The position numbers and the translations under genes are program-made. A DNA stretch of 64,000 bases from Chlorokybus atmophyticus (taxonomy: Eukaryota > Plantae > Mesostigma and Chlorokybus algae), in the NCBI GenBank assembly GCA_009103225.1, contig RHPI01002402.1:963412-1027411 (forward strand), in the 5' to 3' direction. How positions within the stretch are numbered: position 1 is the first letter of the stretch; every line of letters begins with the position of its first letter. Below the pieces are notes generated by a model that worked only from the letters and a program-made list of their open reading frames with translations, searched no databases and had not been told where the DNA came from. Shown here piece after piece: positions 554-63,170 of the stretch.

Positions 554-607
554 GGCGCCGGCGGCGGCAACTCTCCACTGCACTCGGAATCAGCTTGAGA
601 GACAGAC

Positions 608-30198: not shown

Positions 30199-30861
30199 TG
30201 TCACCTGTGAGTTGGTCCGATCCACAACCCTCTCACCAAGACACGGTATTCACACCAGACCCTTGCCCCCTCTGCCAAGCACACACGAGCGCCCCGCCAC
30301 TCGCGTACGCACGCGCATGCGCTCGAAGCTACACACCGACTTGTGTAGCGCCTTGGATCGTCACACAAGCAAGCACACACCAGTGGACACACGCTAGCAA
30401 CCCCTTCTAGCCACCACCAAGCTTGCACACAAGAAACTAGGGAGCTAAGGGTTGTATTCCAAATTGTAGAATGTCACTTTTATACCTACCAGTCTGCACA
30501 TGCTACTGTCTAGACGATTCTAGCGATCGAAGGAACTAGAAGCTAAGATATAATTGCAGAATCTTGTAGTACACTTCTAGACCTTTCCAACGCATCAAAG
30601 ATCTCCTAATTTGCTGCTCACATGGTCAAGTTATACTACTTGGCGCCAGGCCCTTCCAGAAATCTGGTCGAGCCCTTCTCGACTGGCCCTCCGTTTTCTG
30701 GCACCTTCCGGACTGGTCTTGGGGCCCCGGTCGATATCCGCGGCAGACTCATAACTCGCCGATATCCGCCACAAGTCATAACAAACATGTACCTAACAAA
30801 TAAGGCCTAAAACGGCCATGAAAATTATACAAAATTACAAAATTTGGCCTTGACTGTTACA
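30199..30861 (-). repeat. 3' LTR (663 bp, TG...CA)
   Basis: Near-identical to 33570-34218 (about a dozen substitutions plus two small indels) and directly preceded by the PPT on the - strand. Confidence 0.95.
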
Positions 30862-32340: not shown

Positions 32341-32374
32341 GCTTGAGCCAGGACCTCAATTGCATTAAGCCGGC

Positions 32375-33072
32375 TCAGCGTGTCAGCAACACCATTTGAC
32401 GTACCGGGCTTGTACTTGATATCGAAGACAAAAGTTGAAAGAACTCAAGCCATCGAGCTTGTCCGCGACTTAGATGAGGTTTTGTTTGTAAGTACCTCAA
32501 TGGAGAGTGATCCGTCTCAAGCACGAACTTTTTGCCTTCCAAAAAACAACGCCATTGTCGTAGCGCCATGACTTGCGTTAAAAGTTCCTTCTCGTGCACG
32601 AAGTAATTCAGCTCCGCACCACTCATCTTTTTGCTGAAGAATGCTACTGGTTGAAGGCCGTTGCCATGGTCTTGCTGCAAACAGCTCCTACGGCTGTGTC
32701 GGACGCGTCGCAAGCCAAAGTAAATGTCTTTTCCATGTCGGGGTGAGCCAAGACTGGTGCCTCCGTCAGCGCCTTCTTCAACGCAGCAAATGCATGTTCC
32801 TCTGTTGCTGACCAGCTCCAAGGCTTTCCCTTCTTAAGTAGGGCAGTCAAGGGAGCAGCTATGCGCGAAAACCCCATGATAAACTTGCGATAATACCCCG
32901 CAAGGCCTAAAAAGGACATCACCTCCTTTACGTTGGTTGGGGAAGCCCACTCGCGCACCACCTGCACTTTGTTGGGGTCCGGCTTGATGCCTTCATGCGA
33001 CACAATGTGGCCTAGGTACTCCACCTCTCGAAGCAAGAATTTGCACTTTTGTAGCTGGGCGTACAGCTTGTG
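32375..33072 (-). pseudogene. RT C-terminal half and RNase H, frameshifted
   Basis: HKLYAQLQKCKFLLREVEYLGHIVS...FLGLAGYYRKFI...LACDASDTAVGAV, then a frameshift to QDHGNGLQPVAFFSKK...EKELL...LETDHSPL. A second frameshift (~32440) precedes the integrase. Confidence 0.9.
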
Positions 33073-33568
33073 GTGCGCGAAAACACTGCAAAGTCAGCAC
33101 CAGAGCTGAGTGACGATGCTAAGACGGCTACGATGGACCTTGAGGTGTGTAAACTTGTTAAAGAATATCAAGATATCATGGTGGACGGACCTCCATCTGG
33201 TCTACCACCTCCACGGAGCGTAGACCACCGTGTGGAGCTGATTGAGGGCGTGCACAAGCCACCGTATCGACCCGTATACAAGTTGTCACCTTTGGAGCTG
33301 GAAGAGGCCGAGAGGCAGGTGGCGGACTTGCTGATAAGCGGCTACATCAGGCCTAGTAAGTCCCCCTATGGTGCACCTATTTTGTTTGTACGAAAGAAGA
33401 ACGGGAGCTTACGCATGTGCGTCGACTACCGAGCTCTCAACAACATGACGAAGAGGAATTGCGTTCCACTCCCACGTATCGACGAGTTGCTGGAGCAATT
33501 GCAAGGTGCGCAGTACTTCACAACACTTGATCTTGCTGGCGGTTATCACCAAATCCGCATCGCGCCCG
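33073..33568 (+). pseudogene. RT N-terminal fragment in inverted orientation relative to the element
   Basis: Read directly on the + strand: LPPPRSVDHRVELI...SKSPYGAPILFVRKKNGSLRMCVDYRALN...LPRIDELL...FTTLDLAGGYHQIRIAP. It is truncated at the LTR, before the YxDD motif. Confidence 0.9.
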
Positions 33569-33569
33569 T

Positions 33570-34218
33570 TATCACCTCTGAGTTGGTCCAATCCACAACC
33601 CTCTCACCAAGACACGGTATTCACATCGGAACCTTGCCCCCTCTGCCAAGCACACACGAGCGCCCCGCCACTCGCGTACGCACGCGCATGCGCTCGAAGC
33701 TACACACCGACTTGTGTAGCGCCTTGGATCGTCACACAAGCAAGCACACACCGGTGGACACACGCTAGCAACCCCTTCTAGCCACCACCAAGCTTGCACA
33801 CAAGAAACTAGGGAGCTAAAGGTTGTATTCCAAATTGTAGAATGTCACTTTTATACCTACCAGTCTGCACATGCTACTGTCTAGACGATTCTAGCGCTTG
33901 AAGGAACTAGAAGCTAAGATATAATTGCAGAATCTTGTAGTACACTTCTAGACCTTTCCAACGCACCAAAGATCTCCTAATTTGCTGCTCACATGGTCAA
34001 GTTATACTACTTGGCGCCAGGCCCTTCCAGAAATCTGGTCGAGCCCTTCTCGACTGGCCCTCCGTTTTCTGGCACCTTCCGGACTGGTCTTGGGGCCCCG
34101 GTCGATATCCGCGGCAGACTCATAACTCGCCGATATCTGCCACAAGTCATAAAAAACATGTACCTAACAAATAAGGCCTAAAACGGCCATGAAAATCACA
34201 AAATTTCGCCTTGTTACA
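33570..34218 (-). repeat. 5' LTR (649 bp)
   Basis: Direct repeat of 30199-30861. It ends TA rather than CA on the - strand. Confidence 0.95.
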
Positions 34219-39400: not shown

Positions 39401-40365
39401 GCTTGCACGATTGCATATATAACTCTAGAAAACTACATGATACATTACTTGTGAGAAACGTCAAATTGTTGTGAACATCTATCGATGGTTCAAGCTGTGG
39501 TAATGTTTCAACGCCATTAGTGCAATCTCAAACATTCCAGTAGCTGAACCACATGCAGTTGCCCGTATTGTTACATCCGTGGCAAGTCACGTGACGCCTT
39601 AACAAGAACTGCCGCCGAAAAGCTGCCGGTTGCATGGCGCCTGAACGTATTAAGCCCTCAACTAGAAACTTAACTGCGGCGGGAATTTTAGTGCTTTTCA
39701 CAGAAGCCCGATTTCCCAGAACCCAGAAACTCCTTAGACGGACGTTTTGCTTGCTTCGGCGCATTGCCGAGAGGATTGGCGTGGTATTCGCTAAAAATCA
39801 CAGAACGCCATCGAGCTTATAAGGGTTTCTATCGAGCTCCGGTTCGCCTCGTCGAAACCGTTATTGGCGATTTGTCCTCATGCGCGACAGTTAGGGTTAG
39901 TTGGAGGGGGGTGGACAACGCGGCCGAATCAGCAGCCAATTGTGCATTGAATGTCACACACAGCGACTGTGAGGGGGAAAAATAAACAAGTACCTATACC
40001 CACTCTTCCCCGCCAGTGCCTTAGACAGTTATCACAGCGGGCTTCGCCGGCCCCAGGCAAGGCGGCGGCGGCGGCGGCGGCGGCGGAGGAGGAGGAGGAG
40101 CAGCTGGGGCTGCGCCCGTACAGGCGCCAGACAGGCCTTCATAGGCCAGGAGGACCGTCAAGGCTGGGATCGGCGCATGCTGGCCTGCTTGTGACAAGCG
40201 CCCGGAATTAGGGGTTGATTCTTCGAGGTGCATTGAGGGGCAGGCAGCAGCGATCCCCCCTGGTGCAGAGCATGTCATCCCCCCTGTAGTTGCCGTAGTC
40301 GCCCCCTTCCTCCAATGGAAGAAGGAAGCCGGAGAAGACGGCCCCCCCGCCCGGGGGGCGGCCAG

Positions 40366-43300
40366 ATGGCGAGCAAGGCGCTGTTGCTGTTGCTCTGTAC
40401 ACTCTCCGTTGCCTCCGGTAAGTGCATGCGTTGGTCGATTGCACTTGCAACTCAATGCCAAGTTATGATGTACGTATCACTTCCACTTAGAGCACTGTTC
40501 ACGTGTAATCGGCTCACTTGATACTACGCAGTTATAGTGGTGTTCCTGTAGAGATTTGTAACTAGCTGCTTGGTTGTTCATACTTACATGTAAAGCCATT
40601 CCCAAAATGTGTGCTCCATCCGTGTTGAGCTGCTTGGTGTTCGAATTTTCTCCAACAGGTAGCTGCTAAGTGGCTTCAGGTGCCCTTCAGTCTTGTCTCG
40701 CTCAGTTGTGCTACAAGAACCACCTTCATTTGCAGTTGTAGAAGTTTCAAAGCACAGACACATTTGTCAGGGAGCTATGCGTGTCGATAAAGGTCTCATT
40801 CTCTTGCACAAGTTGGCAGTGGCAGTGACTGACGGTGAGATCAATACACAGCCACGCATTTCCGCTACGGTACCATCTACTGGGAGCCCAAGCCGGGTGC
40901 GGACGCGTCAACGCAGTACCAGGTGCAGTTCACATTCCAGGCGGCGTTCCGCCGGGACTACACATGGGGCAAGTTCTTCGACGAGCTGTGGTCATCGGAT
41001 GGTGTGCACTGGCACTCGGGTGTGCCCGACACGCCCATCACCACTGTGCCACCCGCGAACATCATCACTGACCCGAACACCTTCCTCCAGGTGGGCCATC
41101 ACACTTATCTGAAGATGGTGCATATGTATGCTTGCTCACTGGCTTGACTCAGCACATATGAGCATCACTAGTTGCAGTGTTTACAGCCCNNNNNNNNNNN
41201 NNNNNNNNNNNNNNNNNNNNNNNNNNNNNNNNNNNNNNNNNNNNNNNNNNNNNNNNNNNNNNNNNNNNNNNNNNNNNNNNNNNNNNNNNNNNNNNNNNNN
41301 NNNNNNNNNNNNNNNNNNNNNNNNNNNNNNNNNNNNNNNNNNNNNNNNNNNNNNNNNNNNNNNNNNNNNNNNNNNNNNNNNNNNNNNNNNNNNNNNNNNN
41401 NNNNNNNNNNNNNNNNNNNNNNNNNNNNNNNNNNNNNNNNNNNNNNNNNNNNNNNNNNNNNNNNNNNNNNNNNNNNNNNNNNNNNNNNNNNNNNNNNNNN
41501 NNNNNNNNNNNNNNNNNNNNNNNNNNNNNNNNNNNNNNNNNNNNNNNNNNNNNNNNNNNNNNNNNNNNNNNNNNNNNNNNNNNNNNNNNNNNNNNNNNNN
41601 NNNNNNNNNNNNNNNNNNNNNNNNNNNNNNNNNNNNNNNNNNNNNNNNNNNNNNNNNNNNNNNNNNNNNNNNNNNNNNNNNNNNNNNNNNNNNNNNNNNN
41701 NNNNNNNNNNNNNNNNNNNNNNNNNNNNNNNNNNNNNNNNNNNNNNNNNNNNNNNNNNNNNNNNNNNNNNNNNNNNNNNNNNNNNNNNNNNNNNNNNNNN
41801 NNNNNNNNNNNNNNNNNNNNNNNNNNNNNNNNNNNNNNNNNNNNNNNNNNNNNNNNNNNNNNNNNNNNNNNNNNNNNNNNNNNNNNNNNNNNNNNNNNNN
41901 NNNNNNNNNNNNNNNNNNNNNNNNNNNNNNNNNNNNNNNNNNNNNNNNNNNNNNNNNNNNNNNNNNNNNNNNNNNNNNNNNNNNNNNNNNNNNNNNNNNN
42001 NNNNNNNNNNNNNNNNNCCCCCATGGGGTGCGCGAGCCCCTATGTGGCTCAACGTGCTTGCCATTGTCAATGACTCATCATGAGTGTGGTAAACTACTAT
42101 GTAACACGCACATCTCTTTGTGAGCAGTTCCCGTCAGGAACGACGTACGACAACCCAAACAACCCATACTACTTGCGGTTTCCAGTGGGAAGGGGTCTGG
42201 GTTCGGCGTTCCCGCTGCTGCCGGCGAGCGGCACAACGCAGGCGTGCCCTCACGGCCCCTGCCAGTGCACGTCGTACAACGATCCCGGTGACAGCCCCGA
42301 CTGCCCTAACGGCATTTCCGTTGGCACTGTGGTTCAGTTCTCTGAGCCGGTGCTGGCTGCGCTGTACCCGAGCGGCCTTCCTTGTGAAGCTGGACCAAAT
42401 GATCAGCCCGACTACTGCACGCCATGGTCGCAGGTTGGATGTTCAGCACTGTATTCAACACTTGCACTTTCGTTGCTTGCATTTGCACAGCGCGTTCACG
42501 GCTCATATGGACGACGAGTTTGGAGTGGGTTCTAAAGCACAGGTGCTGGCAGGTTTTTGGTTTCTTCTATGGTGATGGAGCCACGCAAGAAGTTGCGATG
42601 GCCATCAACCAGGTGGACTTCACCTCAAGCAAAGCCGGCAACTTCATTCGTGGCAAGGCCGTGTTCACGCATAACTATGCCACTGCAAAGAAGTCTGCCA
42701 CCGAGCCGTGGCTAGCCTACTTCACCGGAGGCAACCGTCTCGTCAACCTCAACAACAACCCGAATGGTCGCTTCCGTTTGGAAGTCACTGTCAACGTGCA
42801 GGGATCCAACAACTCACCGCGTCCCACACAGGTGTGCGACAGTTTTTCCAGTTGAATACCATGGCATGTACCAAGCTGCTTGAGAGCTTCTCACGTGCGT
42901 ACACCTTGTGATTGCAGATTCCCGTGTTGCCTCAACCCTATGTGGGCCGCGCTGACGGCATGGCAAAGTTCCAAATTGCTGCATTTGATCCGGACTTGAT
43001 CTCTCAAGGCGAGGGTGAACTTGCCAACCAGCCCATGTACTACCGGCTGGGTACCAGGATCGAGTAAGTGCGATGCCTATGTTTCAGTAAATCACAACAG
43101 CCGCAATAGTTACTTGACAGTCACTCACTGCACGATACACTGCTTTAGGTATGGTGCATTGATGGGTAACCCGGTTTTCAACCCTACAACCATGACGTGG
43201 TGGCCGTGGGTGTACGAGGCGCAGCGCGCTCAGTTCAACCCATCGTTGCCTGCCTGGGTCGACAGCGTGAACTACGCCACCAACCCAGATTACCTTGTCA

Positions 43301-46300
43301 TTGATGAACTGACGGGTATTGTGACTTGGGAGACGGGTATCGGCCCGTTCCAGATTGACGCTGCATCCTATCAGGATGGCAGTCCCGCTCCCAACCCTCC
43401 CCGTCAGCCCATGAAGTCCGGCTTCTACAACTTGGTGGTCATGGTGAGTGCTCTTGTCAAAGTCTCATGTACTTTTCTCAAGGTGAATATGTTGAAACAG
43501 TTGATGCGCAGGTTTCAGGTCCAGCAAATGATGCGTCCGCTGCTTACATGAACGGCCCGATGAAGGGCAACATCTCCACACCGCTGGACTTCCTCATCTA
43601 CCTTTACCCGTCGATGCACTACTGTGCGATCGATTGCCAGAATGTCCTCGGTGGCATTCAAACGTTCCGCGACTCCGACGGGTTCTACGGAGACCCCCAC
43701 ACGGCCCCTTTTGTCTACAACGGGCCGGGCACCGGTCAGTGCACCATCTGTGGAGGAGGTGAGGAGAACACCACTGTGGTCCGAGACTACACGCTCTGCC
43801 AACCGGTAGTGCCTGGACACACCCTGAGCGGCGCCGACAGCTGCCCAACTGGCACCAGCTGCCCCGGTGTTGTTGTCGATGCCAATGATGCCCTTCTGAA
43901 CAAAGACGTCGACTGCAGCAACTTGGCACAGACTCTGCCCAACCCTGTCTTGCCGCTGTCGATTGTTCCCGCCGTTCCTTCCTGCAAGATGAACACGTAA
44001 GTTGCAAAATGCTGTTCAATGTGTACTCCATTTCGGTTATGCAAGTGTAGACTCACGCATCCTACTTGCACAGTCCGCCTTACTGGGTGGAGTCGGTGGT
44101 TGCTGATGACGGTTTGACGCCCAAAAACGTGGAGTGCATCCCACCCACCTCCACTTGCCCCATTCCGCGAGCCTTGTTCCGCAAGCGCGTGGGCAGCACT
44201 GTCACCTTCGACCTGGTTGCGCGCGACGACGATGAGTGCGTGGAGCTGCAGATCATTGATGTGGGCCTCTACACGGGCATGGTTCTTGGCGACCACGTTC
44301 GCGATGATGAGCGACAGGTATACATACCATTGCTCACCTGGATTCACGTGTGCTAGTCATAAGTCATAGGCTCCACATTGGGATGATGTTTACACGTTGA
44401 TGATCTGATGAATGTTGCTGACTAACATGTCAACCTCTAAAGGTGCGTCGGACATTTACATGGGCGCCAATCTTTGAGACCATCAATGGTGTGGACACTG
44501 ATGTGCGCCCGAGGGATGTGGCGGTCTGTTTCCTAACCACGGACAACTACATCGTTTCCGAGTTCCGTTGCGTCCACATCACATTGTACGAGGACAAGCC
44601 GCTGTACTGGATGGATCAGCGCACGTGGCCGACTCCCGCATTGCACAGCGCGTTTGGCACTCTCCCCACGGCAGTGACACCCTTCAACAACACCAAGTTT
44701 TACGTCACCGCCAACAACACGCTGAGCTTCATGCTCGCCGCCAAGCAGGGCTCCGGTTACGGGCCCATCCGCATCAGCCTCAGCCAGGGAGAGCTCCCAG
44801 ATGGCGCCGAGTTCATCGACCATGTCAGCGATCCCTCCACAAAGACCTTTACATGGACGCCAGCCTCGTCGCAGGAGTGCGAATATCAGCTGTGCTTCAC
44901 CGCGCAGAACAGCCGCAGCCCGGCCGAGTGGGGATCCACACTGCAGGGCCCGTGCGACCCGGCTGATGGCACATACTGCGACGAGCGCTGCTACACCATT
45001 GTCGTCACCGACATGGCCGCCAGCTTTGAGTCCGGCGCATACGTGTTGGCGGATGAGGTCCTCCCGTCTCTCACGGCGGAGTGCGGCATGTCCATGGGCG
45101 CGTGGTTCTTGTTTGAGGAGGTGGGCGCCGCCGCGCAACCAATCCTTACAGCCGGTTACACCCCTGACAGCGATCTTGAATTCATTGTCGTGCACCAGCT
45201 CCTGTGGGAGCCCGTGTACCCTCTCATCTTTGATGATGGCATGAACAACAAGACCCTCGGCAGCTACTATCAGCTGGTGTACGTCAACGGCACCGATGTG
45301 AATCAGACAACCCTCAGCACTGAGCCTCTGTACTGCGACGGCGAGTGGCACTTTGCCATGCTCACCATTGATCCCGCCGGCCTGGTGACTATCTACTTGG
45401 ACGGCGTGCAGTACGTTCAGTATGCCATTGATAGCCGTGAGCACTACCCATGGTCAACGGAGTCTACCAACGCCGACATGATTAACGGCAAGGTCGGTGT
45501 GGTTGGTTCGGTGCTTGAAACCATTGGCGGCGCAGAAGGCCACTTCTTCATTGGCTCGGTGTACAACCAGACAACAGCCGGCCTGATTGATGAGGTCCGC
45601 ATCTACAGCAGGTCGCTGAACGCAGACGAGATCTTTGAGCGATTTACCCATCACCTGGATGCTTCAGAAGAGGTTGGCCTTGTTGGGTACTACAAGTTCA
45701 ATGAGGGCGCCCCCGACGGGTTCTACCAGTACCCGCAGACGGACGGTTCTGCACCGGCTAACCCTGGCACTGCGGAGTTCATTGTTGAGGCGACTAACTT
45801 TGTCATCGTGGACTCCTCGGGCTCAGGCAACAATGCTCGCTGGAACGGGACTGGCGTGTACACGTACGAGTGGACCCCAACTCCACTCACACAGACTTGC
45901 CCACTGCGCGTGTCAATTGAAGATGGCCCCCCTGTTGCACACGTTCACGGTGGACAGCAGTTGACGGTGACGGGAGTCAACTTTGCTCGCAGCAACTGGC
46001 TGAAAGTCAGGGTCGGGACGGAAGTCATTCCTGCCAAGTGGATCTCCAACACTAAGATCCAAGCCATCACTCCTGACTCCACACCATGCTCGCCCCCTGT
46101 TGATGCCAGCAACAACGGCTTTGACTTCAGTGACAACCAGGTATGTCAAAGCCCTTGTGCATGGTTGTGTGCGTATACGCAACCACTGTTAACATACTCC
46201 TCAAGCTTCTGTCAGTTGCTCATATAACGAATGTGATACTCAGGTTCCGCTGTACTATCTGGAAGAGGCCATGCGGTTCAATGGTGTTGATCAGTTTGTC

Positions 46301-49300
46301 AACTCTGACACTGTCAGCCATGACCTCAACAGCACGTTCACAGGATACTCTGTGGGTGGCTGGGTGTATCCACAGGTACTCCTTGATAGGTTTGGGTACA
46401 AGCACCTATTGAAACAAGTAGTAGTCATCAATGCTTACACATTGTTGTTGATGTGTTACAGAGCGGCATGGCCAAGGACAGCATCGTCTTCATGTGGACA
46501 AGCAAGCTGACCCCTGAGCCCCCCTCACCACCTCCGCCTCCGTCTCCTCCTCCACCCAGCCCACCGCCGCCCTCACCTCCTCCGCCTTCCCCACCTCCTC
46601 CTACCCCTCCTCCACCAAGCCCGCGCCCTCCACCTCCTCCACCACCTCCCTCACCTCACCCGCCACCTCCACCTTCCCCACCTCCTCCACAACAGGGTGG
46701 TCGTCGCCTTCTGGAGTTTGAGAATGTCATCAGCGCAGAAGGAATCGCAGTGTACTACCAAACCGACAACACCTTTGCATATGTTGATCGCACGCGCGAA
46801 GGCACGGTGCAGTTCCAGGCCGGAAATATCGTGGCTGCCGCTGATGAATGGCACTACGTCATGCTTACTGTCCACAGCGATGGGTCAGCCAGCCTATATG
46901 TTGATGGTCTCCTCGACACCAACATTACGACGCAGCTTTTCCCAGAGGCCATCCCTCTCTGTGAGCTCCACATCGGTTGCACCTATCAATTCCACCACGC
47001 GCCGCCGTCTCCCTCTCCACCTCCTCCCTCTCCACCCCCCCACCCCCCNNNNNNNNNNNNNNNNNNNNNNNNNNNNNNNNNNNNNNNNNNNNNNNNNNNN
47101 CCTCCCCCTCCACCACCCTCCCCGCCCCCACCCTCGCCGCCGCCTTCACCCCCACCACCCTCTCCTCCCCCTCCACCGAACCCGCCTCCGCCGGATCAGG
47201 GAGGCCGCCGCAGGCTGCTGGCTTACTCCGATGGCATTGGCCACTGCTTCAAGGGCATGGTGGAGGAGGTGACTGTTTGGAAGCGCGCGTTGACGGCGTG
47301 CGAGGTGCAGGCTATCATGTGGACCGGCAACGTCACACGCGGAGCCCTCAGCCCCAGCTGCAGCACTGTGCAGCCCGATGCAGTGAAGGATCAGATCGCG
47401 CGCTACGCGTTCAACGACTTTGTGGGCAGCATCGTATCGGACAGCTCGCGCTACAACAACCCAGCCTTGGCTGTTCATGCGTTCGACGGCGCCACCAATG
47501 AGGAGCCGCTCTGGACCATGACCACCGTGCCATTCTTGCCGCCTTGCGTTCTGCAAGCTGCCAAGGCACGTGACCAGACATGGTGCGCCCCCACCAACCT
47601 GTGGAGTTACGTGCCCAACGCCATTGACTCTGGCGCCTGGACTGGACCAACACCTGCACCCACACCGACTGGGTAAGTTGTCACAACTGGGCATGTGCAA
47701 TGCCTGGTTGTTAAACTGTTGAACTTACCACTGCCATATCTGCAGGTGCGGCGAGTACTACGAGAGTCTGTTGCTGCAGACCATCCCTATTGATGGCCAC
47801 GACCAAGTTACTATGCTCGGCTTTGGCTATGCAAAGAGTCAGTGGCTGCACTGCTCTCTTGAGGATGAGCTAATCCCGGCCACGTTTGTGGCTTTCGATC
47901 GCATCGAGTGCAACATACCTGGCCAAGACACGCCTGGAGAATACCGTTTAAGCATCACCAACAACGCCGCAGAGAAGGGCACACAAATCCCCTACCCATG
48001 CGAGAGTCAAAACACCACCGGCGCCGTCGTGCCAGTATACACCACTCCCGAGTGGCTGACAGTGATGGAGATGGCGTTGTACTTTGACGGTGCTGATGAC
48101 TATGTTGATTCGCCTTGGGCAAACAACGCCGCCTCCAACACTCCCTTCTCCGGCATCACGATGGGAGCCTGGTTCTACCCTATTGATGATAGCATCTGCC
48201 AGGAACAGCCGGTGCTTTGCTTCGCAGCTCCCTGTGCAGGCAACCAAGGCTCAGACGTCCCGCTGCAAGTATGCATCATGTACAAGAACCAGCGAGTGTA
48301 CTTGTACTCAGACATGGAGGTCTACTACGGAGCCGAGAACCTCAATTACAAATACAATGAAACAGTCAGCATTGAGGCGGTGATTGATGAGTGGCACTAC
48401 GCTGAGGTGGTCATCAACAACACGCAGATTGATCTGCCCACCGACATGTCTGACTTTGCATACGAAGCAGCACTCATGGTGGATGGCGTGAAGCTCAACT
48501 TTTCCATTCCATTTGCCATGGATGGTGTGCCTGAGGCCGGTGGCAACTTCTACGTTGGTGGTGTCTGGTGTGGCCTGGCACCACCATCACCATCACCTCC
48601 CCCTCCTCCGCCCCCACCATTCCCTCCTCCGCCCTCTCCACCACCACCACCACCTCCACCCACACCCAACCCGCCACCCCCACNNNNNNNNNNNNNNNNN
48701 NNNNNNNNNNNNNNNNNNNNNNNNNNNNNNNNNNNNNNNNNNNNNNNNNNNNNNNNNNNNNNNNNNNNNNNNNNNNNNNNNNNNNNNNNNNGTCGATCAG
48801 GGCTCCTCCCCCACCTCCACCTCCTCCACCTCCACCCCCACCTTCCCCACCCCCACCTGATCAGGGCGGTCGCCGCCGCTTGCTCGCGTCTCCCGGCGGC
48901 GGCAGCGGCGGCATCACCGACCTCGGCCACTGCAATGCAGACTCAAGGAAGTTTTTCAAGGGCTTCATTGATGAAGTGCGTGTGTTCGCCTCTCCAGACA
49001 TGGCTCGCGACACGCAGACCATGTTTGCACGCGTGCCTGAGAGCGAGTACGACACTGCGCCAATAGTGTACTATCGCATGAACCCGAGCACTGGTGACAG
49101 CCAGCAGTTGTACACGTTCACGCCCACTGAAGATGTGCAAGGTGTGCTCGACAGCTTCCGCACGGGCAACCAGGGCGAGCGCGAGCAGGGCACCGCTCAG
49201 TTCGTCATCAACAACGAGCCAGGCTACATGTACATCACCGCTCCATGGGAGGCTTCTTCAACATCGTACCTCAGTGAAGCTGCTACCATGCAGCTTGATG

Positions 49301-52300
49301 GTGGTGACTCTGTACTGGTTGAAGGCTTCAACTTTGCAAAGAGCCAGTGGCTGAAGTGCGCACATTCATTTGTCAACAACTTGCCAAGCAGCAACACGAC
49401 CACAATTGTCACGGCCGTCAAGCTCACAGCTGCAGCTCTGCCTGCAGCGGAGAACGCCGATAATGAGTTCTTCATGTCGAGCATTGTGGGCTACGATGGT
49501 ATGAGCGCGGAGTGCGAGTCTGCTCCTGCAGATGCACCTGGCCAGGTGGTCCTGCAGGTGGTGAACCCAAAGTCCACTGACGACTTTGTGTCGCTCTCAT
49601 ATGCCGAGAAGGTGTTGGAATTCCAGGGCGACCGTACCACAACTTCCGCAGAGTTGATTGGTGGCTACGCCGACGAGGACGACACCCTCACGCTGACCTG
49701 CCCCGAAGGCCTGCGCATGGAGAGCCTGCAATTCGCCAGCTTTGGAAGACCAGCGAACAAGTGCAACAATGACGTGCGTATCAACTGCGACGCCTCGACC
49801 ACTGATGTACCATGCGACTTCACCGCGTTCAACATCAACCCACAATGCGACAGCAACAGCAGCACCGTGCACGAGATTGTGGAGGTGATGTGCATCGGCC
49901 AGAGCACCTGCAGCATCCCTGCGGTGGTGTCTCTGTTTGGCGACGCGTGCCCGCGCGACAAGAAGTGGCTCTCCGTTGCAATGCAGTGCACGGACAGGTG
50001 GGCGGCAATGGACTTTGTGGACTTCAAGAGCGTGCTCCCTGCGCTGAGTTCATCGGCGTACTCTTTCGGCGCGTGGGTTTATCCCTATGAGAACAGCCAG
50101 CTGCAGTCCGTTATTGCGTTCGGCAGCCTGGGCGACAACCACAATCGTGCCGTGCTGCAATGGAAGAGTTCTGGCCTTGATGATCTCATTGGCACCTTCT
50201 ACTACTACGATGACCACATCCACGACGTTGGCCTGAAGTACCCTGATGGAAGCGACAGATATGTTGCAACTGGGCAGTGGCATCATGTCTTTATCACAGG
50301 TAATGTGCATGCAATATTGGGTGTATATACACTGCATGCATGCTGATAACGTTTAAGCTGATACCAATCGTGTCTCACAGTCAATGAGACCAATGAAGGC
50401 ACACTATACATCAATGGAATGGCCACTTCAACGTTTGCAACAGTCTCCCGGCCGGACACGTCCGCCGACGGCACTCTATACATTGGCATGAGCCTTGATG
50501 ACGACCACTATCCGTCTGAGTACTTCTCAGGCCTTATCGATGAGGTAAGGAGCCATTCAACCACCTCATGGTTAACAACATCTACGTCACATGTACCTGA
50601 CAAGGAGGTTGTTGTGCGCAGGTCCGTGTTTACGATTACGCACTCACGGCAGAGGAGGTGATGTCCTTCGTGTGTGGCAGCGATGTCGCCGAGCCCGTAG
50701 GCCACCTGCGTTTCAATGACATTGATGAAACTCTGGGAATTGTATCCGGTGGTGGCGTGCTGGCGCAGTCGGAGTCTTCCAACTGGGACAACACCACCCT
50801 GAGCTTTAAGGGCACGGGGCTTAAGTCCGTCCACGCCGCCGGCACGTGGTTCGGTGTGCCATGGTTCCCCGCTGTGCCAATCAGCATCCAAGACACGTCC
50901 GCTACCTCAGACGTGTACCCGCAGACCTCCGGCGCGGTCAAGAACGGCACTGAGGTCACCATCATGGGCATCAACTTTGCGGGTACCGCATCGGTTCTGC
51001 TTAATGGTGAGGTGCTGGCGTCAACATGGACCTCCAATTCGGAAATGGTGGTCACGTTGCCTGCCGGCACAATGCCCGATGACCTGACTGTCATCAACTC
51101 GGCTATCTGCGGCGACCCCATCAACTCGCTCACGTACGAGCGTGAAGTCATCCTTGAGGATCTCGTGTACGGCCTTTGCGCTTACTACCCCTTCAACGGC
51201 GACGCCAAGGATGCTAGCGGTAACGGCAACCACGGCATGGCTGTTGAGGCAGTCCTTACAGAAGGTATGTAGCATTATGCATTCGTCTGAACACACTATG
51301 ACGGTTTGGGCTTATGTCATGCATCGTTGATGTGTGTTGCGCACAATTGCGCACAATTCTTACCTGCAATGTTGGAATGTGCAGACAAGGATGGACGGAG
51401 CAACAGCGCTTACAGGTTCCTCGACGACGTAGCGGCTGGTGTGTACATCACGCCGTGCGATGGTGCAGCCACAGTCAGCATGTGGGTGTACTTTGACGAC
51501 GTGGCCTTCCCGACCTACAGCGCCTGCGATGGATACGAGCAGGGTGCTTGCCAGGCAGGCAACGCCACCATCAACGGGGCTTGGAAGTTTGTTGCCGTCA
51601 CTGTTGATGCCACAGAGACCCGCTTGTACCTCAACGGCTACCAGATCAGCAACAGCTCTGCATACGCCGCTCCTGCCCTGGAGGCCTTGACCATGGGTGT
51701 CATTGGCCGCACGCTGCATGGCGCTGTCGACGAGGTGCGCATTTACAACCGCATCCTCAGCGAAGCTGAGATTGCAAAGATCCACTTCACTAATGACTAC
51801 GCTCTCGAGTTTGGTGCCGGCCAGTACGTGTCCATCGCACCGAGCGGGCCGACCCCTCAGGGAAGCAGCGGCCTCATCGCAGTCTACACCGGCGGTAATG
51901 CGCAGGTGACTGAGCTCATTACCGACATCAACGCCGAGTGGGGCCTTGCGGCGCCAGCTGGCATCAGCGTCCTCGACGCGTGGTCCGTGGAAATCACCGG
52001 CTGGGTGTTCGCGCCCACCACTGACACGTACAACTTCTCTGTGCGTGCCGATGACGCCGTTGTGCTCTCGGTCAGCGAAGTGCTGCTGGTCAATGACACC
52101 GCTTATCAGGGTGATGCCCGCGTGCTGTCTGGCAGCATTGAGCTGACCGGCCCTCAGTGGTACAACCTTTGGTTTGCTTACACGGACAAGACAGATATTG
52201 CCTCTTACCAGCTGCGCTGGTCGACGACGTCCGGCTCCATCGCCAATGAGACGGTGCCCAAGTACTACCTTCGCTCTGGTGCCGGGCCTTTCACGGTGTC

Positions 52301-55300
52301 TGCGTGGGTTTACCCGTACACTGTTGACGGCCACCAGACCATCCTTGGCCAGACTTTGGATAACAGCTACACTGGCTTTGGCTTCGGCATTGAGAATGGC
52401 GGCGTGTCCGTTGCTGTCTACACTGGCTGCTCTTGCGAGCGCGACACCAACGTCAAGTGCAACGCATACAGGACGCTGTCGAGCTGGAAGGCTGCTGTCG
52501 TGCCCAACATGTGGCAGTACATCACTGCCGTGTACGACGGGTCCTCTTGGGCCGTCTACATCGACGGCATCCTCAAGGACTGGACCAACTATGATTCGGT
52601 TGTCTACTACATGGGCAGCGGCCAAGACTTTATGCTTGGCCGTGAGAACTTCGGCAATTTGGCGGAGGGCGCGTTCTACTACACAGAGCCGTACGAGCGC
52701 GTCTTCCATGGCCTCATCCACTCCGTCAAGATGTACAATGTAGCCATGACCGATGTTGATGGCATCGCCGCTGGAATGAACTGCGCGCCGAAGGCAGCGG
52801 AGAACAACATGACTCTGTGGCTGAAGCTCGATGAAGGCCTGGGCACCGTTGTGCTAGACTCTAGCAATGCTGGTGTCTTTGCTGCTGGCGCCCTTCAAAT
52901 GAGCCCCAAGCCCGCTGCCTTTGAGTTCTGGGTCAACACCACTGTTGGCTGCGGCAACTGGACTGAAAACAACGATATGCATTCTGTCACAGGTAACTTT
53001 GCTCAAGTGTATCTCTTCCTATGTACTTGTAAGTTGTACTTGGTACGTGTGTTTGCATCTGCTAACAATTCATTCTCTCTCAGATGCTTCTATCAGCGAT
53101 GTGGTTGGCACAGCTCTTACCGAAGTGGTGGCTGGCGAGTGTGGCGTGTTTACGATTACGTCGAGGGATGCTTGCGGCAACAGGAGGAAGGTTGGTGGCG
53201 ACATGTATAAGGTGTCCTTGATCGGCCCTCTTCATCTGCACTCCAACTCGTTGGAGCTGGACGTTGAGGACCTCAATGATGGCACTTACTCGGTGACATT
53301 CAGCGCCACCATTAGCGGCTACTACTACATTGAGGTACATAGTCGCGGCTGTTGTCATGTATTTTTGCTCATCACAGGAAGCATGCAGTATTGACATATG
53401 TTGGTTGGCAGGTGGAGCTTGATGGTGACGCAGTCTACGCCGACAAGACTTTCATCCATCCCAATGTGGCTGACCCCTCTCAAACATACTTTTATGTGCC
53501 GAGCAACAACACATTAGGCGTGAACGGCATTGAGACGGCTTGGGCTGGTGTGCCTGTGTCTTTCATGGCCCAGGTGTGTATCTTTCTCAAGCTTTGAGGT
53601 TCTTCTACAGGTATCATGTGTAGTTGAAATTCTCACATGCCATACTGTCTTGCAGACTGTGGACGCATACGGAAACCTTCGCACAACTGGCGGTGACAGC
53701 GATTGGTCCGTGATCATCACTGGACCTTATGACTTCTCCGCGGACGTGGTCGACAACGATGACGGCACTTACACCTTCACGTATCTTTCCAAGATCAAGG
53801 GCCAGTACATGATGAATGCGACATTCTGCGGACAACCCATCTGCCAGGTAACAGTCAGCAGACTGCTCATGTGGCTGATGGTTCTTCCATTCATGATGCT
53901 GTTACATATGTGGTATACGCATGCAAGTGTCTGAGCTGCTGTTGCTTGCAGTACGGCGGCATGGCCTGCTGTGGAGGTACAAAGGCAGCACGCAGCGCGT
54001 GCACGCTGTCCATTCGGCCGGCGGGTGAGAGCTGCTTGTTCCCGCTGGTGGTGTCTGATGGCAGTGCCCTCAGCACCAGCTTCGATACCCCCTACGCGAC
54101 GGTTCCGGACAGCGATCTGCTGGACCTGGAGTCGCCGTTCACGGTGATGGCGTGGGTCTGGAAGCACACGCCTCCGGTGCCCTCACCACCACCTCCGTCT
54201 CCACCTCCGCCGTCTCCTCCCCCGCCTCCCCCACCGAGCCCTCCACCTCCCTCGCCACCGCCCAACCCGCCTCCTCCCAGCCCCTCCCCGCCTCCTCCAA
54301 GGCCGCCTCCCCCATCTCCACCTCCACCCTCACCCCCACCCCNNNNNNNNNNNNNNNNNNNNNNNNNNNNNNNNNNNNNNNNNNNNNNNNNNNNNNNNNN
54401 NNNNNNNNNNNNNNNNNNNNNNNNNNNNNNNNNNNNNNNNNNNNNNNNNNNNNNNNNNNNNNNNNNNNNNNNNNNNNNNNNNNNNNNNNNNNNNNNNNNN
54501 NNNNNNNNNNNNNNNNNNNNNNNNNNNNNNNNNNNNNNNNNNNNNNNNNNNNNNNNNNNNNNNNNNNNNNNNNNNNNNNNNNNNNNNNNNNNNNNNNNNN
54601 NNNNNNNNNNNNNNNNNNNNNNNNNNNNNNNNNNNNNNNNNNNNNNNNNNNNNNNNNNNNNNNNNNNNNNNNNNNNNNNNNNNNNNNNNNNNNNNNNNNN
54701 NNNNNNNNNNNNNNNCCCACCACATCCGTCACCACCCCCACCCTCGCCTCCACCTCCGTCACCTCCACCCCCCGAGGCTGGAGGCCGGAAGCTGCTTTCC
54801 CTGGACACGTTGCTCGACACGCCCTACGAGTACATCCTCTCCAAGCAGTCCGAGCACAGCAACAAGGGCTACTGGTTTGGCATGAAGCAGCTCCCGACCT
54901 GGGGCACGTTCAATGTGACTGTCGGCATCTACGTTGGTGCGGAGACTTTCCGCGTCCTCGACCAGGTCATTGACCTCGAGTACAACAGCTGGCTGCACCT
55001 CGCCGCCACGTACAACGGCACCGAGCTGCGCTTCTACATCAATGGCGTGTTGACGGCCAATGCCACATACGACTACCGTGAGGTCATGCTGCAGAAGCGT
55101 AACAACCAGCCGCTTCGCATTGGCAAGGGCTTCAACGGCTACGTCGATGAAGTGAAGCTCTTCAGCCGAGTGCTGTCCGCATCGCAGATTGACTATGCTG
55201 CCGCATGCACGTGCGACAAGGCCAGCCTCGCGAAGCAGGACAAGTCGTTAATTGCCTTCTACCGCTTTAACGATGCTACTGGTTACGTTGTTCGGGACTC

Positions 55301-58300
55301 GAGCCTGTCAGGCCACCACGGCATGATTGGCATGGAGTTCACAGAAGTCGATCAGGGCCACAACGCCCACATCACCTGCCCCGTGGGCACCACTGTCACC
55401 GACGTCCTGTACGCCAACTACGGCACCAACCAGGGCGTGGGCGGCGCGTACATGGTGGACGACTGCAGCAGCGAGAACTCTATGCTCGTGGTTCGCGCGG
55501 CCTGCCTTGGTGAGAACTCGTGCATGGTCACAGCCAGCAACGATGCCTTTGGCGGAAACCCCTGCACCCACGTCACCAAGAGTCTGGCCATCAGCGTCCT
55601 GTGCAGCTCCCCAAGCAAGAACCTGTGGGCCGTCGACCAAGCACCCTCCCTCATCGGCGTGCCAAAGGTTGGACCCAAGCCCTGGTGCCTTGATGGCCGA
55701 TGCAAGACCTGGAGCATCCGCAAGGCCGTGTCCGGAGAGCCAATCACCTTTGGCATGACCGGCATCGACAGCTGCGGGTTCAAGGAGATCTATGGCGGGC
55801 AGCCATACTCTGTCATGATGACCTACCCTGATGAACTTGTGACGGAGGTTGATGAGCAGCACACCTGCGTGCCCACATGGATAGCGGGCAGCACTTTGGA
55901 CGGCTCCTTCGCATGGACAGGAATGGACAAGTACAACCTTTCCATCACCCCAACCAAGGCCAGCTCCGCTGTGCTCGACATCATGCTCGACGCCAAGCGG
56001 GCCTTCTCGTACAAGCTGACCGTCCTGCCCGGCCCTGCCGCAGCTGAGACCAGCGCTGTGCTCGCCAGCCACGACAGGAGCATCCAGGCAGGTGTCTCCA
56101 CATCTATTGTTGTTCTACTGTTGGACGTCAACTCCAACCTCGTGCCCGTCAACAACGCTCTGTTGGAACGCTTGATGCTCGACGTTACTGGCGGCGACAG
56201 CGTGTACGGCGCGACGGGGGTTGGTGCTGAGACCAGCACTGCCGAGATGTTCCTGATGTTCCCTCAGTCTGGCGTCTACTCGGTGGACGTGAAGCTGTGC
56301 GATGAGGAGGACCACACCAGCTGCGAACTGATCGACCACTTGGTCTTCACCGTGTCTGCGTGGGTGCCGAGGGAGGTCGACAGTGTCACTCTGCCAGCCG
56401 AACGCTTCGAGCACTCCGCTGCTGTGGTTGGCTCTGAGGTGATCGTATTTGGCGGTGCTGGCAAGGATAAGTCCTACCTCGGTGAGACGTGGAAGCTCAA
56501 CTTGGGCGACATTAGCTGGGAAGAGTACTTTGCTTTCCGCGCCCCCGTGACAGTGTCTGGAGACATCGTCGCATCATCGTACAACCTAGAGGTTGCTGTG
56601 GACACGTTTTCGCTCATTGTGGCGGGCAACATGCGCTCCGACTGCGGTGACGTTCGTTTCGTCACCGCTGAAGGCACCTCGCTGCCATACTGGGTGGATC
56701 CTCTGCCCGGTTGCGGAGCAAGCAACACCGTCTTCTGGGTCAAGGTGGCCTCTGATGAGGACTTCTTCATGTACTATGGCTCGCAGACTTCCATGTCAAC
56801 CTCAACCGAGACCATCTTCGAGCTTTTTGAGGGCTTCGAGTACAACGCCAGCATCTTCAACAACCACTGGAGTCTGAAGGACGACTCTGCCTGCTCACCA
56901 GGCAGCATCAATGTTGGAAGTGAAGCTGCATTTGTTACTTCGGATGAGGTGGCGCTCCAGGGTACCCGCGCGCTGCGCGTTGACACACAGCTCTTGTCCG
57001 GAGGCTCCATCCAGCTGGACATCAGCAGCGCTATCGAGGACTTGCCGTCATACCGCTTCAAGGCATACCTGTACGATGGCAACTGTGCCGACGCCACTCA
57101 CTACATCAGTCCTGACGTTGACGGCAACGAGCAGTGCGACGTCGACAACAGCAAGCCTCGATTGCCAATGTACAACGCGCTCGGCCTGTACACGAGTGCC
57201 GCGCGCGACATGTATGCGATGTCTTACCCGTGGAGGTCGGCAGGCGCGCAACGTTCACCCGGCTGGCACAGCCTTGCTTTCTACAGCAACAACACGGCTC
57301 TGACCATGTATGTTGATGGCATGGCCGCAAGGCTCTCCAGCAGCAAGCCCAGCACTCTCAACGAGAACATCTTCATCCGTGGCGGCATGTTTGCCAACTT
57401 CTCGGAAGGCAACGCTTACTGGGATGCCATCATCGTCACGGAGTACCTGCCGGGTGTCAATGCGTCCGTGGATCTCACAGCAGCGGAGGCTGTCCTTTAC
57501 AACCCGTCGGCTACCGAGTGGGTTATGGTTGAGACAGATCACACGCCTCCAGCAAGGCAGGGACATAGCTCAGTCGTTTATGACTCCGCTGTGTACATCT
57601 TTGGTGGCGAGCGCAGCGCGTATGAGTACAATGACCTCTGGAAGTACTCCCATGAGAATGAGGTGAGTGATAGAACAAAGATACACATGCGTTGGTCTGT
57701 GAGACATTATTGATGATGATGAGGATGATGATGATGATGCTTTCCTAACATGCTTTTGTGTTGCAGGACTGGACCTTTGTGACGCTCATCACCAACACCA
57801 CACCTGCTGGAAGGCACGACCACAGCGCCGTTGCCTACAACGGCTCCATGTACGTGTTTGGCGGCCGCTCCCCGCAGCCGCTGGGAGACTTCTGGAAGTT
57901 CACTTTCAACAACGGCTCCTGGGACATGTTGACTTCACCCGAAATGGAGGGCCTGTCTGCGCGCTTTGGGCACTCTGCCGTTGTGGTCGAGGACAGCATG
58001 TACGTGTACGGCGGGTACAGCCAGATGGGTGGCTTGATGGCAGACATCTGGCAGTACAACTTCACCACGTCGATGTGGGCATCAGTTGAGCCCACAGTGA
58101 ACGGGACGAGTACATATGTTGATGACTCTGCAATCCTGTTGCCCGCAATAAACGTCCCCGAGGCCCGCTTTGCCCACACGGCCGGCGCCTACGGCGGCGC
58201 CATGTACATTGTTGGTGGCGCGGGCGGACTTCGCATGCGCACGGCATTTGATGACGTGTGGAAGTTTGACGTTGCATCGAAGCAATGGCAGCCTCTCTAC

Positions 58301-58471
58301 AACGAGACCGGCCTTGGTCGATACGACGCAGATGGTGGCGTGGTCGTGCTCGATGGAGGCGCGCCCTTCTTTGTTGTCTTTGGTGGCCACGGACACGGCA
58401 CATTCCACAAAGACACGCAAGCCTACTTCATTGGAGGCCAGAGTCACACCAGCAGCGCTTCATCGTCATAA
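40366..58471 (+). CDS. giant secreted multidomain glycan-binding protein (~20 exons, roughly 5,000 aa): LamG/pentraxin-like x~7, IPT/TIG, SUEL lectin x2, PA14, filamin-Ig x2, DUF2341, Kelch, extensin-like Pro-rich x4
   Basis: Signal peptide MASKALLLLLCTLSVAS|A (exon 40366-40417). LamG motifs (xWHY/F..., GLIDEVRIY); SUEL (~49680-49990 and ~55360-55605); PA14 (GWVFAPTTDTYNFSVRADD, ~51870-52270); filamin (VEDLNDGTYSVTF, DNDDGTYTFTY); DUF2341 (MRSDCGDVRF...LPYWV...VFWVKV); Kelch (RxxHS..YxFGG). Phases checked at several GT-AG junctions; stop at 58471. No C-terminal TM or GPI signal seen. Confidence 0.85.

Positions 58472-59717: not shown

Positions 59718-63170
<3,453 letters not shown>

What the first reader, a model, noticed from the sequence alone, without database searches (positions are those of the whole stretch)
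40366..58471. ~5,000-aa secreted lectin-array protein of unfamiliar architecture
Seen: signal peptide, ~7 LamG, IPT/TIG, 2 SUEL, PA14, 2 filamin-Ig, DUF2341, Kelch propeller, many N-glycosylation sequons, and no membrane anchor. Known: LamG, SUEL and PA14 bind carbohydrate. I do not recognise this combination from any characterised protein. Inference: a scaffold for the cell coat or scales, an adhesin, or a microbe-capture protein.
Basis: partly seen in the sequence, partly recalled or inferred. Interest (0 to 1): 0.75.

Follow-up and report, generated by a model that had tools for sequence, protein, structure and literature searches.

The report
Giant secreted lectin-repeat matrix protein
This is one real 20-exon gene of the early-branching green alga Chlorokybus for a secreted protein of about 5,000 residues made of sugar-binding-type modules. 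It belongs to an unstudied family kept end to end from prasinophyte algae to Chara, and in Chlorokybus and Mesostigma it also carries extensin-like proline rods that end in protease-type cut sites.

Summary
On the + strand, 40366-58471 holds a signal peptide, 7 LamG, TIG, 2 SUEL, PA14, 2 filamin, DUF2341 and Kelch domains, with no membrane anchor. About 4,850 codons are readable and contain no stop.

It is one gene, not several. The locus is collinear over more than 4,000 residues (37-44% identity) with proteins of 4,400-5,500 aa from Mesostigma, Chara, Cymbomonas, Pyramimonas (read from a transcriptome) and metagenomes. The public Chlorokybus annotation cuts the gene at an assembly gap. Gap 1 lies in an intron. 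Gaps 2-4 lie inside proline-rich coding tracts.

The architecture is therefore not unique. However, every relative is labelled hypothetical, and no paper in the searched library cites any of them.

Four SPPPP tracts sit inside LamG loops. Each ends in GGR(R/K)LL, an RxLL motif like the subtilase processing sites of plant pro-PMEs. Three of the tracts are shared with Mesostigma. The bare RxLL motif is also present at the same loops in Chara and Cymbomonas.

My best reading is a multivalent glycan-binding matrix protein, possibly cut inside its LamG domains. The function and the cleavage are inferred, not shown.

Earlier scan notes (s1-078981, s1-183771, s1-181032) describe the same kind of protein on another piece of this genome.

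The parts
40366..40417 (+). Exon 1: start codon and signal peptide (MASKALLLLLCTLSVAS...), with donor G|GTAAGT
   Evidence: Spliced to exon 2, it reads ..SVASA|THFRYGTIYW, matching Mesostigma ..QLASA|THFRYGTISW.
40852..44317 (+). Exons 2-8: conserved Cys-rich N-terminal region of about 650 aa. It has no firm Pfam family and contains a SIBA-E_N-like stretch at 42565-42798. It is among the best-conserved parts of the protein (52-63% identity to Mesostigma).
   Evidence: SIBA-E_N scores 25.7 bits here (cut-off 28.1) and 29.3 bits in the Cymbomonas ortholog.
41091..42127 (+). Intron 2, containing the whole of assembly gap 1 (41190-42017)
   Evidence: Donor CAG|gtgggc and acceptor gtgagcag|TTC, phase 0 on both sides. 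The ortholog alignment shows no missing residues.
44443..46140 (+). Exon 9: weak He_PIG-type Ig (44674-44916), LamG A (45277-45633) and TIG (45928-46137)
46244..47310 (+). LamG B, interrupted by Pro tracts 1 and 2 (exons 10-11)
46510..46713 (+). Pro tract 1 (SPPPP repeats, fully sequenced) ending in GGRRLL at 46696-46713
   Evidence: Mesostigma has a tract and motif at the same site.
46999..47220 (+). Pro tract 2, holding gap 2 (47049-47100), ending in GGRRRLL at 47200-47220
47746..48577 (+). TIG-like module plus LamG C. No Pfam hit in this piece, but it aligns with the orthologs' domains.
   Evidence: The Cymbomonas Laminin_G_2 hit at residues 1994-2130 lies inside residues 1803-2096, which tblastn aligns to this stretch.
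48578..48885 (+). Pro tract 3, holding gap 3 (48684-48791; the frame shifts 1 to 0 across the gap), ending in GGRRRLL at 48865-48885
49693..49989 (+). SUEL/rhamnose-binding-lectin-type domain 1 (FGR, GDAC and KWL in place of YGR, DPC and KYL)
   Evidence: E 7e-13 to rhamnose-binding lectin 5h4s
50038..50680 (+). LamG D, spread over exons 12-14
50907..51080 (+). TIG domain
51385..52992 (+). Exon 15: LamG E (about 51411-51785), PA14 (51918-52226) and LamG F (52281-52754)
53084..53847 (+). Two filamin-type Ig repeats (exons 16-18)
   Evidence: E 5e-9 and 1e-7
53952..55190 (+). LamG G, interrupted by Pro tract 4
54171..54797 (+). Pro tract 4, holding gap 4 (54343-54715), ending in GGRKLL at 54780-54797. 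This tract is specific to Chlorokybus: aligned orthologs have 11-28 residues here.
55371..55604 (+). SUEL-type domain 2
55719..56357 (+). Two Ig-like beta sandwiches, seen in the predicted structure
   Evidence: strand-only segments at residues 280-492 of P0001
56358..58468 (+). Six-bladed Kelch propeller. Blade 1 lies at about 56358-56519 and blades 2-6 at about 57498-58400 (intron 57663-57766). A DUF2341 plus ConA-like jelly-roll module (56520-57497) is inserted between them.
   Evidence: (LZTR1 Kelch Z 39.5, 298 residues aligned over model range 493-1150)
58469..58471 (+). TAA stop. No coding signal follows on the + strand.
   Evidence: Orthologs end at the same point.

Best explanation
The locus is a single 20-exon Chlorokybus atmophyticus gene. 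About 4,850 codons are readable, and the full protein would be about 5,000 aa if the gap sizes are right. It is the ortholog of an unstudied family of giant secreted proteins in green algae.

Shown:
- The layout runs: signal peptide; a conserved Cys-rich N-terminal region; repeated TIG/LamG units with SUEL, PA14 and filamin modules; and a C-terminal Kelch propeller carrying an inserted DUF2341/ConA-like jelly roll.
- There is no membrane anchor.
- Four translated SPPPP tracts lie inside LamG loops, and each ends in GGR(R/K)LL.

Inferred (about 0.6): the protein is exported and acts as a multivalent glycan-binding scaffold or cross-linker of the cell covering (sheath, wall or scales). The proline tracts would serve as hydroxyproline-glycosylated rods.

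Inferred (about 0.4): a site-1-protease/subtilase-type enzyme cuts after each RxLL in the secretory pathway. Each rod would then become a free C-terminal tail, while the two halves of the cut LamG sandwich stay together non-covalently. This would also remove the problem of fitting a stiff rod into a loop.

The confidence given (0.65) is for the whole statement. The gene and family identity alone is about 0.95.
For: Identity of the locus:
- The annotated model jgi/Chlat1 Chrsp66S07199 is 100% identical to 54882-58468 but starts at an internal Met just after gap 4.

One gene:
- tblastn collinearity of 40848-58441 with Mesostigma residues 27-4959, Chara 312-5238 and Cymbomonas 28-4919.
- MAFFT identity of 37-44% over 4,000-4,570 aligned residues to eight full-length proteins.
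- No stop in any exon, and the ATG is in phase through 11 exons.
- A Pyramimonas ortholog of 5,078 aa comes from a transcriptome.

The Pro tracts are coding:
- Codon positions 1 and 2 are 81% and 92% C, while position 3 is near uniform.
- Ser is encoded by both TCN and AGC.
- The tracts are in frame with the flanking exon at all 7 readable borders.
- The motif codons differ synonymously between sites.
- Three tracts with GGRRLL sit at the same sites within the annotated Mesostigma CDS.

The motif:
- Chlorokybus has exactly 4 RxLL motifs (0.6 expected by chance), and all four follow the tracts.
- RSLL or RHLL sits at the same aligned loops in Chara, Cymbomonas, P0179 and P0180, which lack Pro tracts.
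- RRLL and RKLL are pro-PME processing motifs (bioRxiv 10.1101/2022.07.28.501549).
- RXXL/RXLX are the recognition sequences at which SBT6.1 cleaves GLV1 precursors (PMC4983112).

Lectin character:
- Pfam hits.
- SUEL domain 1 matches solved rhamnose-binding lectins.
- The inserted module folds as a ConA-like jelly roll (pLDDT 88; Z about 15 to GH16 and lectin folds) but lacks the GH16 ExDxxE motif.
Against: - I found no Chlorokybus transcript or peptide. A search for transcript-derived fragments across tract 1 was blank.
- Three tracts are broken by assembly gaps, and the frame across gap 3 does not match.
- No sugar-binding residue has been tested, and SUEL domain 2 departs from the YGR/DPC/KYL motifs.
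- Cleavage, hydroxylation and localisation are all untested.
- The tracts contain no Tyr or Lys, so classical extensin cross-linking is unlikely.
- Relatives also occur in algae not known to bear scales (Chloropicon, Prasinococcus).
Confidence: 0.65

Rival explanations
1. The locus holds several separate genes, as the public annotation implies; that annotation has a 1,161-aa model starting after gap 4.
For: Model Chrsp66S07199 starts at an internal Met at 54882. Four gaps break the sequence.
Against: That model begins in the middle of a LamG domain. Twelve proteins of 4,361-5,475 aa from other algae are collinear with the whole locus. LamG domains are split across gaps 2, 3 and 4. There are no stops, and the phases are consistent.
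Confidence: 0.03
2. The proline-rich stretches are introns (C-rich tracts ahead of a CAG|GG acceptor) and are not translated.
For: Tracts 1-3 end in ..CAG|GG. A codon-trained parser that had not seen Pro codons skipped them.
Against: The tracts show strong 3-base periodicity, with purines making up 46% of third positions. Ser is encoded by AGC as well as TCN. The tracts are in frame at 7 of 7 borders. Tract 4 has no usable acceptor. The gene's real introns are 68-125 nt and not C-rich, apart from the first two at 434 and about 1,037 nt. The Mesostigma CDS keeps three tracts in frame. No good donor site lies upstream of any tract.
Confidence: 0.06
3. It is a scale-specific protein that assembles or tethers the organic scales of zoospores, rather than a general matrix component.
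For: Named relatives come mostly from scale-bearing taxa: Mesostigma, Cymbomonas, Pyramimonas, Tetraselmis, Chara and Pycnococcus/Pseudoscourfieldia. Scales are acidic polysaccharide, and Chlorokybus zoospores bear scales (PMC10762512).
Against: Chloropicon and Prasinococcus also have relatives. The four scale-associated proteins identified in Scherffelia are three type-2 membrane proteins of 750-1,070 aa and a cytoplasmic filamin-like protein, not this architecture (PMC4494055). Only 30 of the 150 listed hits were given a taxon, so absence from naked lineages is not established.
Confidence: 0.2
4. It is an adhesin or recognition molecule (cell-cell, cell-substrate or gamete agglutinin-like), or a lectin that captures microbes.
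For: PA14, SUEL and LamG domains occur in adhesins. The weak SIBA-E_N match points to a Dictyostelium adhesion protein family. Algal agglutinins are giant hydroxyproline-rich proteins (my own knowledge).
Against: There is no anchor to hold it on the cell. One-to-one collinear conservation across very old lineages fits a housekeeping structural role better than fast-evolving recognition.
Confidence: 0.15
5. It is an enzyme acting on wall polysaccharide, through the GH16/lyase-like jelly roll or the propeller.
For: The best fold matches of the inserted module are GH16 glucanases and PL14/PL20/PL36 lyases.
Against: Z values of 12-15 are shared with non-catalytic lectins (calreticulin, ERGIC-53, legume lectins) in the same list. 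There is no ExDxxE motif. Identity is 7-14%.
Confidence: 0.05

Closest known systems
Unstudied green-algal giant proteins: Mesostigma viride Mv19218-RA.1, Chara braunii GBG58751.1 (CBR_g151), Cymbomonas tetramitiformis KAK3287761.1 and KAK3252748.1, Pyramimonas obovata A0A7S0WPQ0
   Same: Collinear over the whole length, with the same domain order and the same mature N-terminus (T/S-HFRYGTISW). All end right after the propeller.
   Different: Only Mesostigma shares the Pro tracts, at three sites. Tract 4 is unique to Chlorokybus. None of these proteins has been characterised.
Chimeric extensins and hydroxyproline-rich glycoproteins of green algae and plants
   Same: SPPPP repeats in a secreted protein joined to globular modules. 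Reviews state that green algae have long chimeric extensins (PMC10762512).
   Different: Here the rods sit inside loops of folded LamG domains rather than between domains. They lack Tyr/Lys cross-link motifs, make up under 10% of the protein, and are absent from most orthologs.
Plant pro-pectin-methylesterases and other S1P/SBT6.1 substrates
   Same: RRLL/RKLL-type motif in a secretory-pathway protein.
   Different: In those substrates the site separates a pro-region from a mature domain. Here four sites lie within domains, and cleavage is untested.
Gralins / scale-associated proteins of Scherffelia (SAP98, SAP116, SAP126)
   Same: Extracellular proteins of early green algae that are absent from land plants. 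SAP126 has two ConA-like domains (PMC4494055).
Animal LamG matrix proteins (laminin alpha LG, agrin, perlecan) and attractin/MEGF8
   Same: Tandem LamG modules that bind glycans in the matrix, and an extracellular Kelch propeller with lectin modules (my own knowledge of these families; the Pfam ATRN-LZTR1 propeller hit is).
   Different: There is no EGF, CUB or C-type lectin module, and the domain order is different. This is a resemblance of parts only.
Dictyostelium SibA-E (integrin-beta-like adhesion proteins)
   Same: Weak match to their N-terminal domain, Pfam PF24907.
   Different: No VWA domain, TM segment or cytosolic tail. The match is below the Pfam cut-off in Chlorokybus.

Membership tests
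Green-algal ~5,000-aa LamG/TIG/SUEL/PA14/filamin/Kelch-DUF2341 family (Mv19218 / CBR_g151 / CYMTET_4743) | Full-length collinear similarity | tested here: met
   tblastn, residues 27-4959 of Mesostigma; 37-44% identity over more than 4,000 residues.
Green-algal ~5,000-aa LamG/TIG/SUEL/PA14/filamin/Kelch-DUF2341 family (Mv19218 / CBR_g151 / CYMTET_4743) | Signal peptide followed directly by (T/S)HFRYGTISW, and an end just after the propeller with no anchor | tested here: met
Green-algal ~5,000-aa LamG/TIG/SUEL/PA14/filamin/Kelch-DUF2341 family (Mv19218 / CBR_g151 / CYMTET_4743) | Same Pfam domain set | tested here: met
Extensins (classical) | Ser-Pro(3-5) repeats | tested here: met
Extensins (classical) | Tyr-containing cross-link motifs (YXY, VYK) within the repeats | tested here: not met
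   no Tyr or Lys in any tract.
Extensins (classical) | Proline hydroxylation and O-arabinosylation | not testable with these tools
   Needs biochemistry.
S1P/SBT6.1-type subtilase substrates | R-x-L-L (RXXL/RXLX) site in a protein that enters the secretory pathway | tested here: met
   with the signal peptide. Motif definition.
S1P/SBT6.1-type subtilase substrates | Actual cleavage at the site | not testable with these tools
   Needs N-terminomics or an in vitro assay.
SUEL / rhamnose-binding lectins | Domain match plus the YGR, DPC and KYL sugar-site motifs | tested here: inconclusive
   The domain matches. Domain 1 has FGR/DAC/KWL and domain 2 has YGT/NPC/KSL.
GH16 glycoside hydrolases | ExDxxE catalytic motif on the jelly roll | tested here: not met
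Gralins (scale-associated type-2 membrane proteins) | N-terminal TM anchor with a short Ala/Arg-rich tail, and a size of about 750-1,070 aa | tested here: not met
   against PMC4494055.

The most novel reading that the evidence does not exclude
An ancestral green-lineage matrix protein is built as a chain of fragments. Conserved RxLL protease cuts inside LamG beta sandwiches would leave the halves clipped together non-covalently. In the Mesostigma/Chlorokybus lineage, an 'extensin rod + GG-RxLL' cassette would have been placed repeatedly at such loops, and also in paralogs, so that each cut frees a glycosylated rod. This would be a split-domain way of joining lectin blocks to wall rods that has not been described in plants or algae.
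Probability: 0.3. Interest if true: 0.8.

Novelty: new variant of a known kind. Interest (0 to 1): 0.6.

Why it matters
A collinear protein of about 5,000 residues is kept from prasinophytes to Chara, and no land-plant or core-chlorophyte relative appeared among the named hits. That makes it a candidate core component of the ancestral green-algal cell covering, whose proteins are almost unknown.

The locus also corrects the public annotation, which cuts the gene at a gap.

It offers a testable idea as well: extensin-type rods inserted into lectin domains next to conserved subtilase-type sites. Such sites are known so far from land-plant wall enzymes and peptide precursors, so this idea would extend them to the base of the streptophytes.

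Tried and rejected
- My own exon parser first skipped the Pro tracts as introns and chose the acceptor at 42138. Ortholog alignment and phase moved the acceptor to 42128, and codon statistics restored the tracts.
- The first word search with the Mesostigma N-terminal region timed out. The repeat on residues 200-680 worked.
- A search for transcript-derived fragments across tract 1 found nothing, which is inconclusive.
- The PDB profile search of the propeller insert was swamped by Kelch hits, so the insert was folded alone.
- The GH16 and lyase readings of the insert were rejected for lack of a catalytic motif.
- Gralins were rejected as relatives on architecture.
- No paper cites any family accession.
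- Look-up of earlier notes by sequence was blank.
- The joined spliced protein was never sent to a search or fold tool. Exons were searched one by one by reference. The joined model was used only inside local scripts, for counts and for MAFFT/tblastn comparison with fetched orthologs.
- The N-terminal region could not be folded, because it is spread over seven exons and no relative of 1,200 aa or fewer covers it.
Full report
**What is there.** The window has 52.8% G+C and seven runs of N. On the + strand, long stop-free stretches run from about 42 kb to 58.5 kb. A codon-usage scan shows coding signal only on this strand between 40.9 and 58.4 kb, and none after 58.47 kb.

Pfam scans of stop-free pieces and single exons, always by reference, gave:
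- Laminin_G_3 in seven places.
- TIG twice.
- SUEL twice.
- PA14 once.
- Filamin twice.
- DUF2341 once.
- Kelch repeats at the 3' end.
- A weak He_PIG match and a weak SIBA-E_N match.

The ATG is at 40366 and the TAA ends at 58471.

**Organism and annotation.** A word search with 54717-57710 returned jgi/Chlat1 Chrsp66S07199 (Chlorokybus atmophyticus, 1,161 aa) at 100% identity. That public model starts at an internal Met, inside a LamG domain, just after gap 4. The annotation is therefore cut by the gap.

**Gene model.** It was then corrected with orthologs and codon statistics.
- The result is 20 exons and 19 GT-AG introns. Introns are mostly 68-125 nt; the first two are 434 and about 1,037 nt.
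- From the ATG to gap 2 the frame runs through 11 exons for 1,487 codons without a stop.
- All five inter-gap segments are free of stops, with 4,841 readable residues.
- With the 533 exonic N counted at face value, the protein has about 5,000 residues.
- The joined protein was used only in local scripts and was never sent to a search or fold tool.

**The gaps.**
- Gap 1 lies in intron 2. Exon 2 ends ..TFLQ in phase 0, and exon 3 starts at 42128 (FPSGTTYDNP..) in phase 0. Mesostigma shows no extra residues there.
- Gaps 2, 3 and 4 each lie inside a proline-rich tract that is readable on both sides.
- The frame agrees across gaps 2 and 4 and is off by one across gap 3. That is what an estimated gap length can produce.

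**One gene, and a family.** A full HMMER scan of 1.84 billion representatives with the 998-aa C-terminal piece found proteins of 3,800-5,500 aa matching at E 1e-147 to 1e-177. Look-ups named several of them:
- Mesostigma viride Mv19218 (4,959 aa).
- Chara braunii GBG58751.1 (5,242 aa).
- Cymbomonas tetramitiformis KAK3287761.1 and KAK3252748.1.
- Pyramimonas obovata A0A7S0WPQ0 (5,078 aa, from a transcriptome).
- Shorter or partial relatives in Tetraselmis, Pycnococcus, Prasinococcus and Chloropicon.

tblastn shows 40848-58441 collinear with Mesostigma residues 27-4959, Chara 312-5238 and Cymbomonas 28-4919. MAFFT gives 37-44% identity over 4,000-4,570 aligned residues. The orthologs carry the same Pfam set, the same mature N-terminus and the same C-terminal end. 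This settles the single-gene question as far as comparison can, and it shows that the architecture is conserved rather than unique. None of the family accessions appears in the searched literature.

**Proline tracts.** Four SPPPP tracts lie inside LamG domains: two in LamG B, one in LamG C and one in LamG G. Each ends in GGRRLL, GGRRRLL, GGRRRLL or GGRKLL.

The tracts are coding, not intronic, for these reasons:
- Codon positions 1 and 2 are 81% and 92% C, while position 3 is near uniform.
- All four Pro codons are used, and Ser is encoded by both TCN and AGC.
- The Pro frame matches the flanking exon at all seven readable borders.
- The motif codons differ synonymously between sites.
- Tract 4 has no usable acceptor.
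- Mesostigma has tracts with GGRRLL at the same three sites within its annotated CDS.

Tract 4 is specific to Chlorokybus. The tracts contain no Tyr or Lys.

**The RxLL motif.**
- Chlorokybus has exactly four RxLL motifs against 0.6 expected, and all four sit at the tract ends.
- At the same aligned loops, Chara has RSLL (sites 1 and 2), while Cymbomonas has RHLL and two other relatives have RSLL (site 3). None of these has a Pro tract there. The motif is therefore older than the rods.
- The same cassette (Pro tract + GG + R(R/K)(S)LL) also occurs in a Chlorokybus paralog (Chrsp115S00763), a Mesostigma paralog (Mv15517) and one further protein.
- RRLL and RKLL are the processing motifs of plant pro-pectin-methylesterases. 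RXXL/RXLX are the canonical subtilase recognition sequences at which SBT6.1 (S1P) cleaves GLV1 precursors.
- Cleavage here is an inference. It would explain how a stiff rod can sit in a loop of a folded sandwich.

**C-terminal module.**
- AlphaFold2 on the annotated 1,161-aa model with 39 homologs gave pLDDT 82 and pTM 0.72.
- Solved Kelch domains align with Z up to 39.5, but over model residues 493-1150 with only about 300 residues aligned. The six-bladed propeller is therefore interrupted after its first blade by about 320 residues.
- Folded alone, that insert gave pLDDT 88 and pTM 0.89. It consists of a DUF2341 sandwich plus a ConA-like jelly roll.
- The best matches of the insert (Z 12-15) mix GH16 glucanases, polysaccharide lyases and non-catalytic lectins. 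It lacks the GH16 motif.
- This module recurs in many shorter algal proteins.

**Function.**
- Shown: the protein has a secretory signal and no anchor. Most of it is made of modules whose families bind carbohydrate. SUEL domain 1 matches solved rhamnose-binding lectins. Sequons are mildly enriched.
- Inferred: it is a multivalent glycan-binding scaffold of the cell covering.
- Named relatives come mainly from scale-bearing algae, and Chlorokybus zoospores bear scales. However, Chloropicon and Prasinococcus also have relatives, and only 30 of the 150 listed hits were named, so a scale-specific role is only a rival reading.
- The characterised scale-associated proteins (gralins) have a different architecture.

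**Earlier notes.** The scan's earlier notes on another piece of this genome describe a giant lectin/Ig/Kelch/DUF2341 protein with extensin tracts ending in protease-like tags (s1-078981, s1-183771, s1-181032). They agree with what I found independently. Whether they concern a paralog or the same gene in another window could not be told.

**Limits.**
- No Chlorokybus RNA or peptide evidence was found.
- The N-terminal region was not folded.
- The taxon survey is incomplete.
- The gap contents are unknown.

Noticed in passing
window 30825-33768: Pieces of a Ty3/gypsy-type retroelement: a 494-aa integrase with a chromodomain-like tail on the - strand, plus RT/RNase H fragments on both strands.
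   Followed up: no
window 62064-62700: A long (GA)n/(CT)n microsatellite of about 500 bp, with a single N at 62372.
   Followed up: no
window 54882 (start of the public model Chrsp66S07199): The public Chlorokybus annotation starts this model at an internal Met inside a LamG domain, right after assembly gap 4. The gene is therefore split in the released gene set.
   Followed up: yes
P0024 (Chlorokybus Chrsp115S00763), P0074 (Mesostigma Mv15517), P0138: Other giant proteins of these two algae carry the same cassette: an SPPPP tract followed by GG and RRRSLL, RKLL or RRRLL. The cassette is therefore not confined to this gene.
   Followed up: partly
P0007 (Chara braunii GBG58751.1), residues about 1760-1850: At the loop where Chlorokybus has Pro tract 2, Chara has a long Ser/Thr-rich low-complexity insert ending in ERSLL. 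The Chara model also has about 310 extra N-terminal residues ahead of the conserved start, probably a model error.
   Followed up: no
P0074, P0065 (Chloropicon primus), P0056: The conserved N-terminal region (THFRYG.. to about residue 650) also heads other proteins of 3,400-4,000 aa. It is therefore a module shared by several giant algal families.
   Followed up: partly
window 40021-40125, - strand: A short poly-Pro-coding run on the opposite strand, just upstream of the start codon. It is probably only a G-rich 5' region.
   Followed up: no
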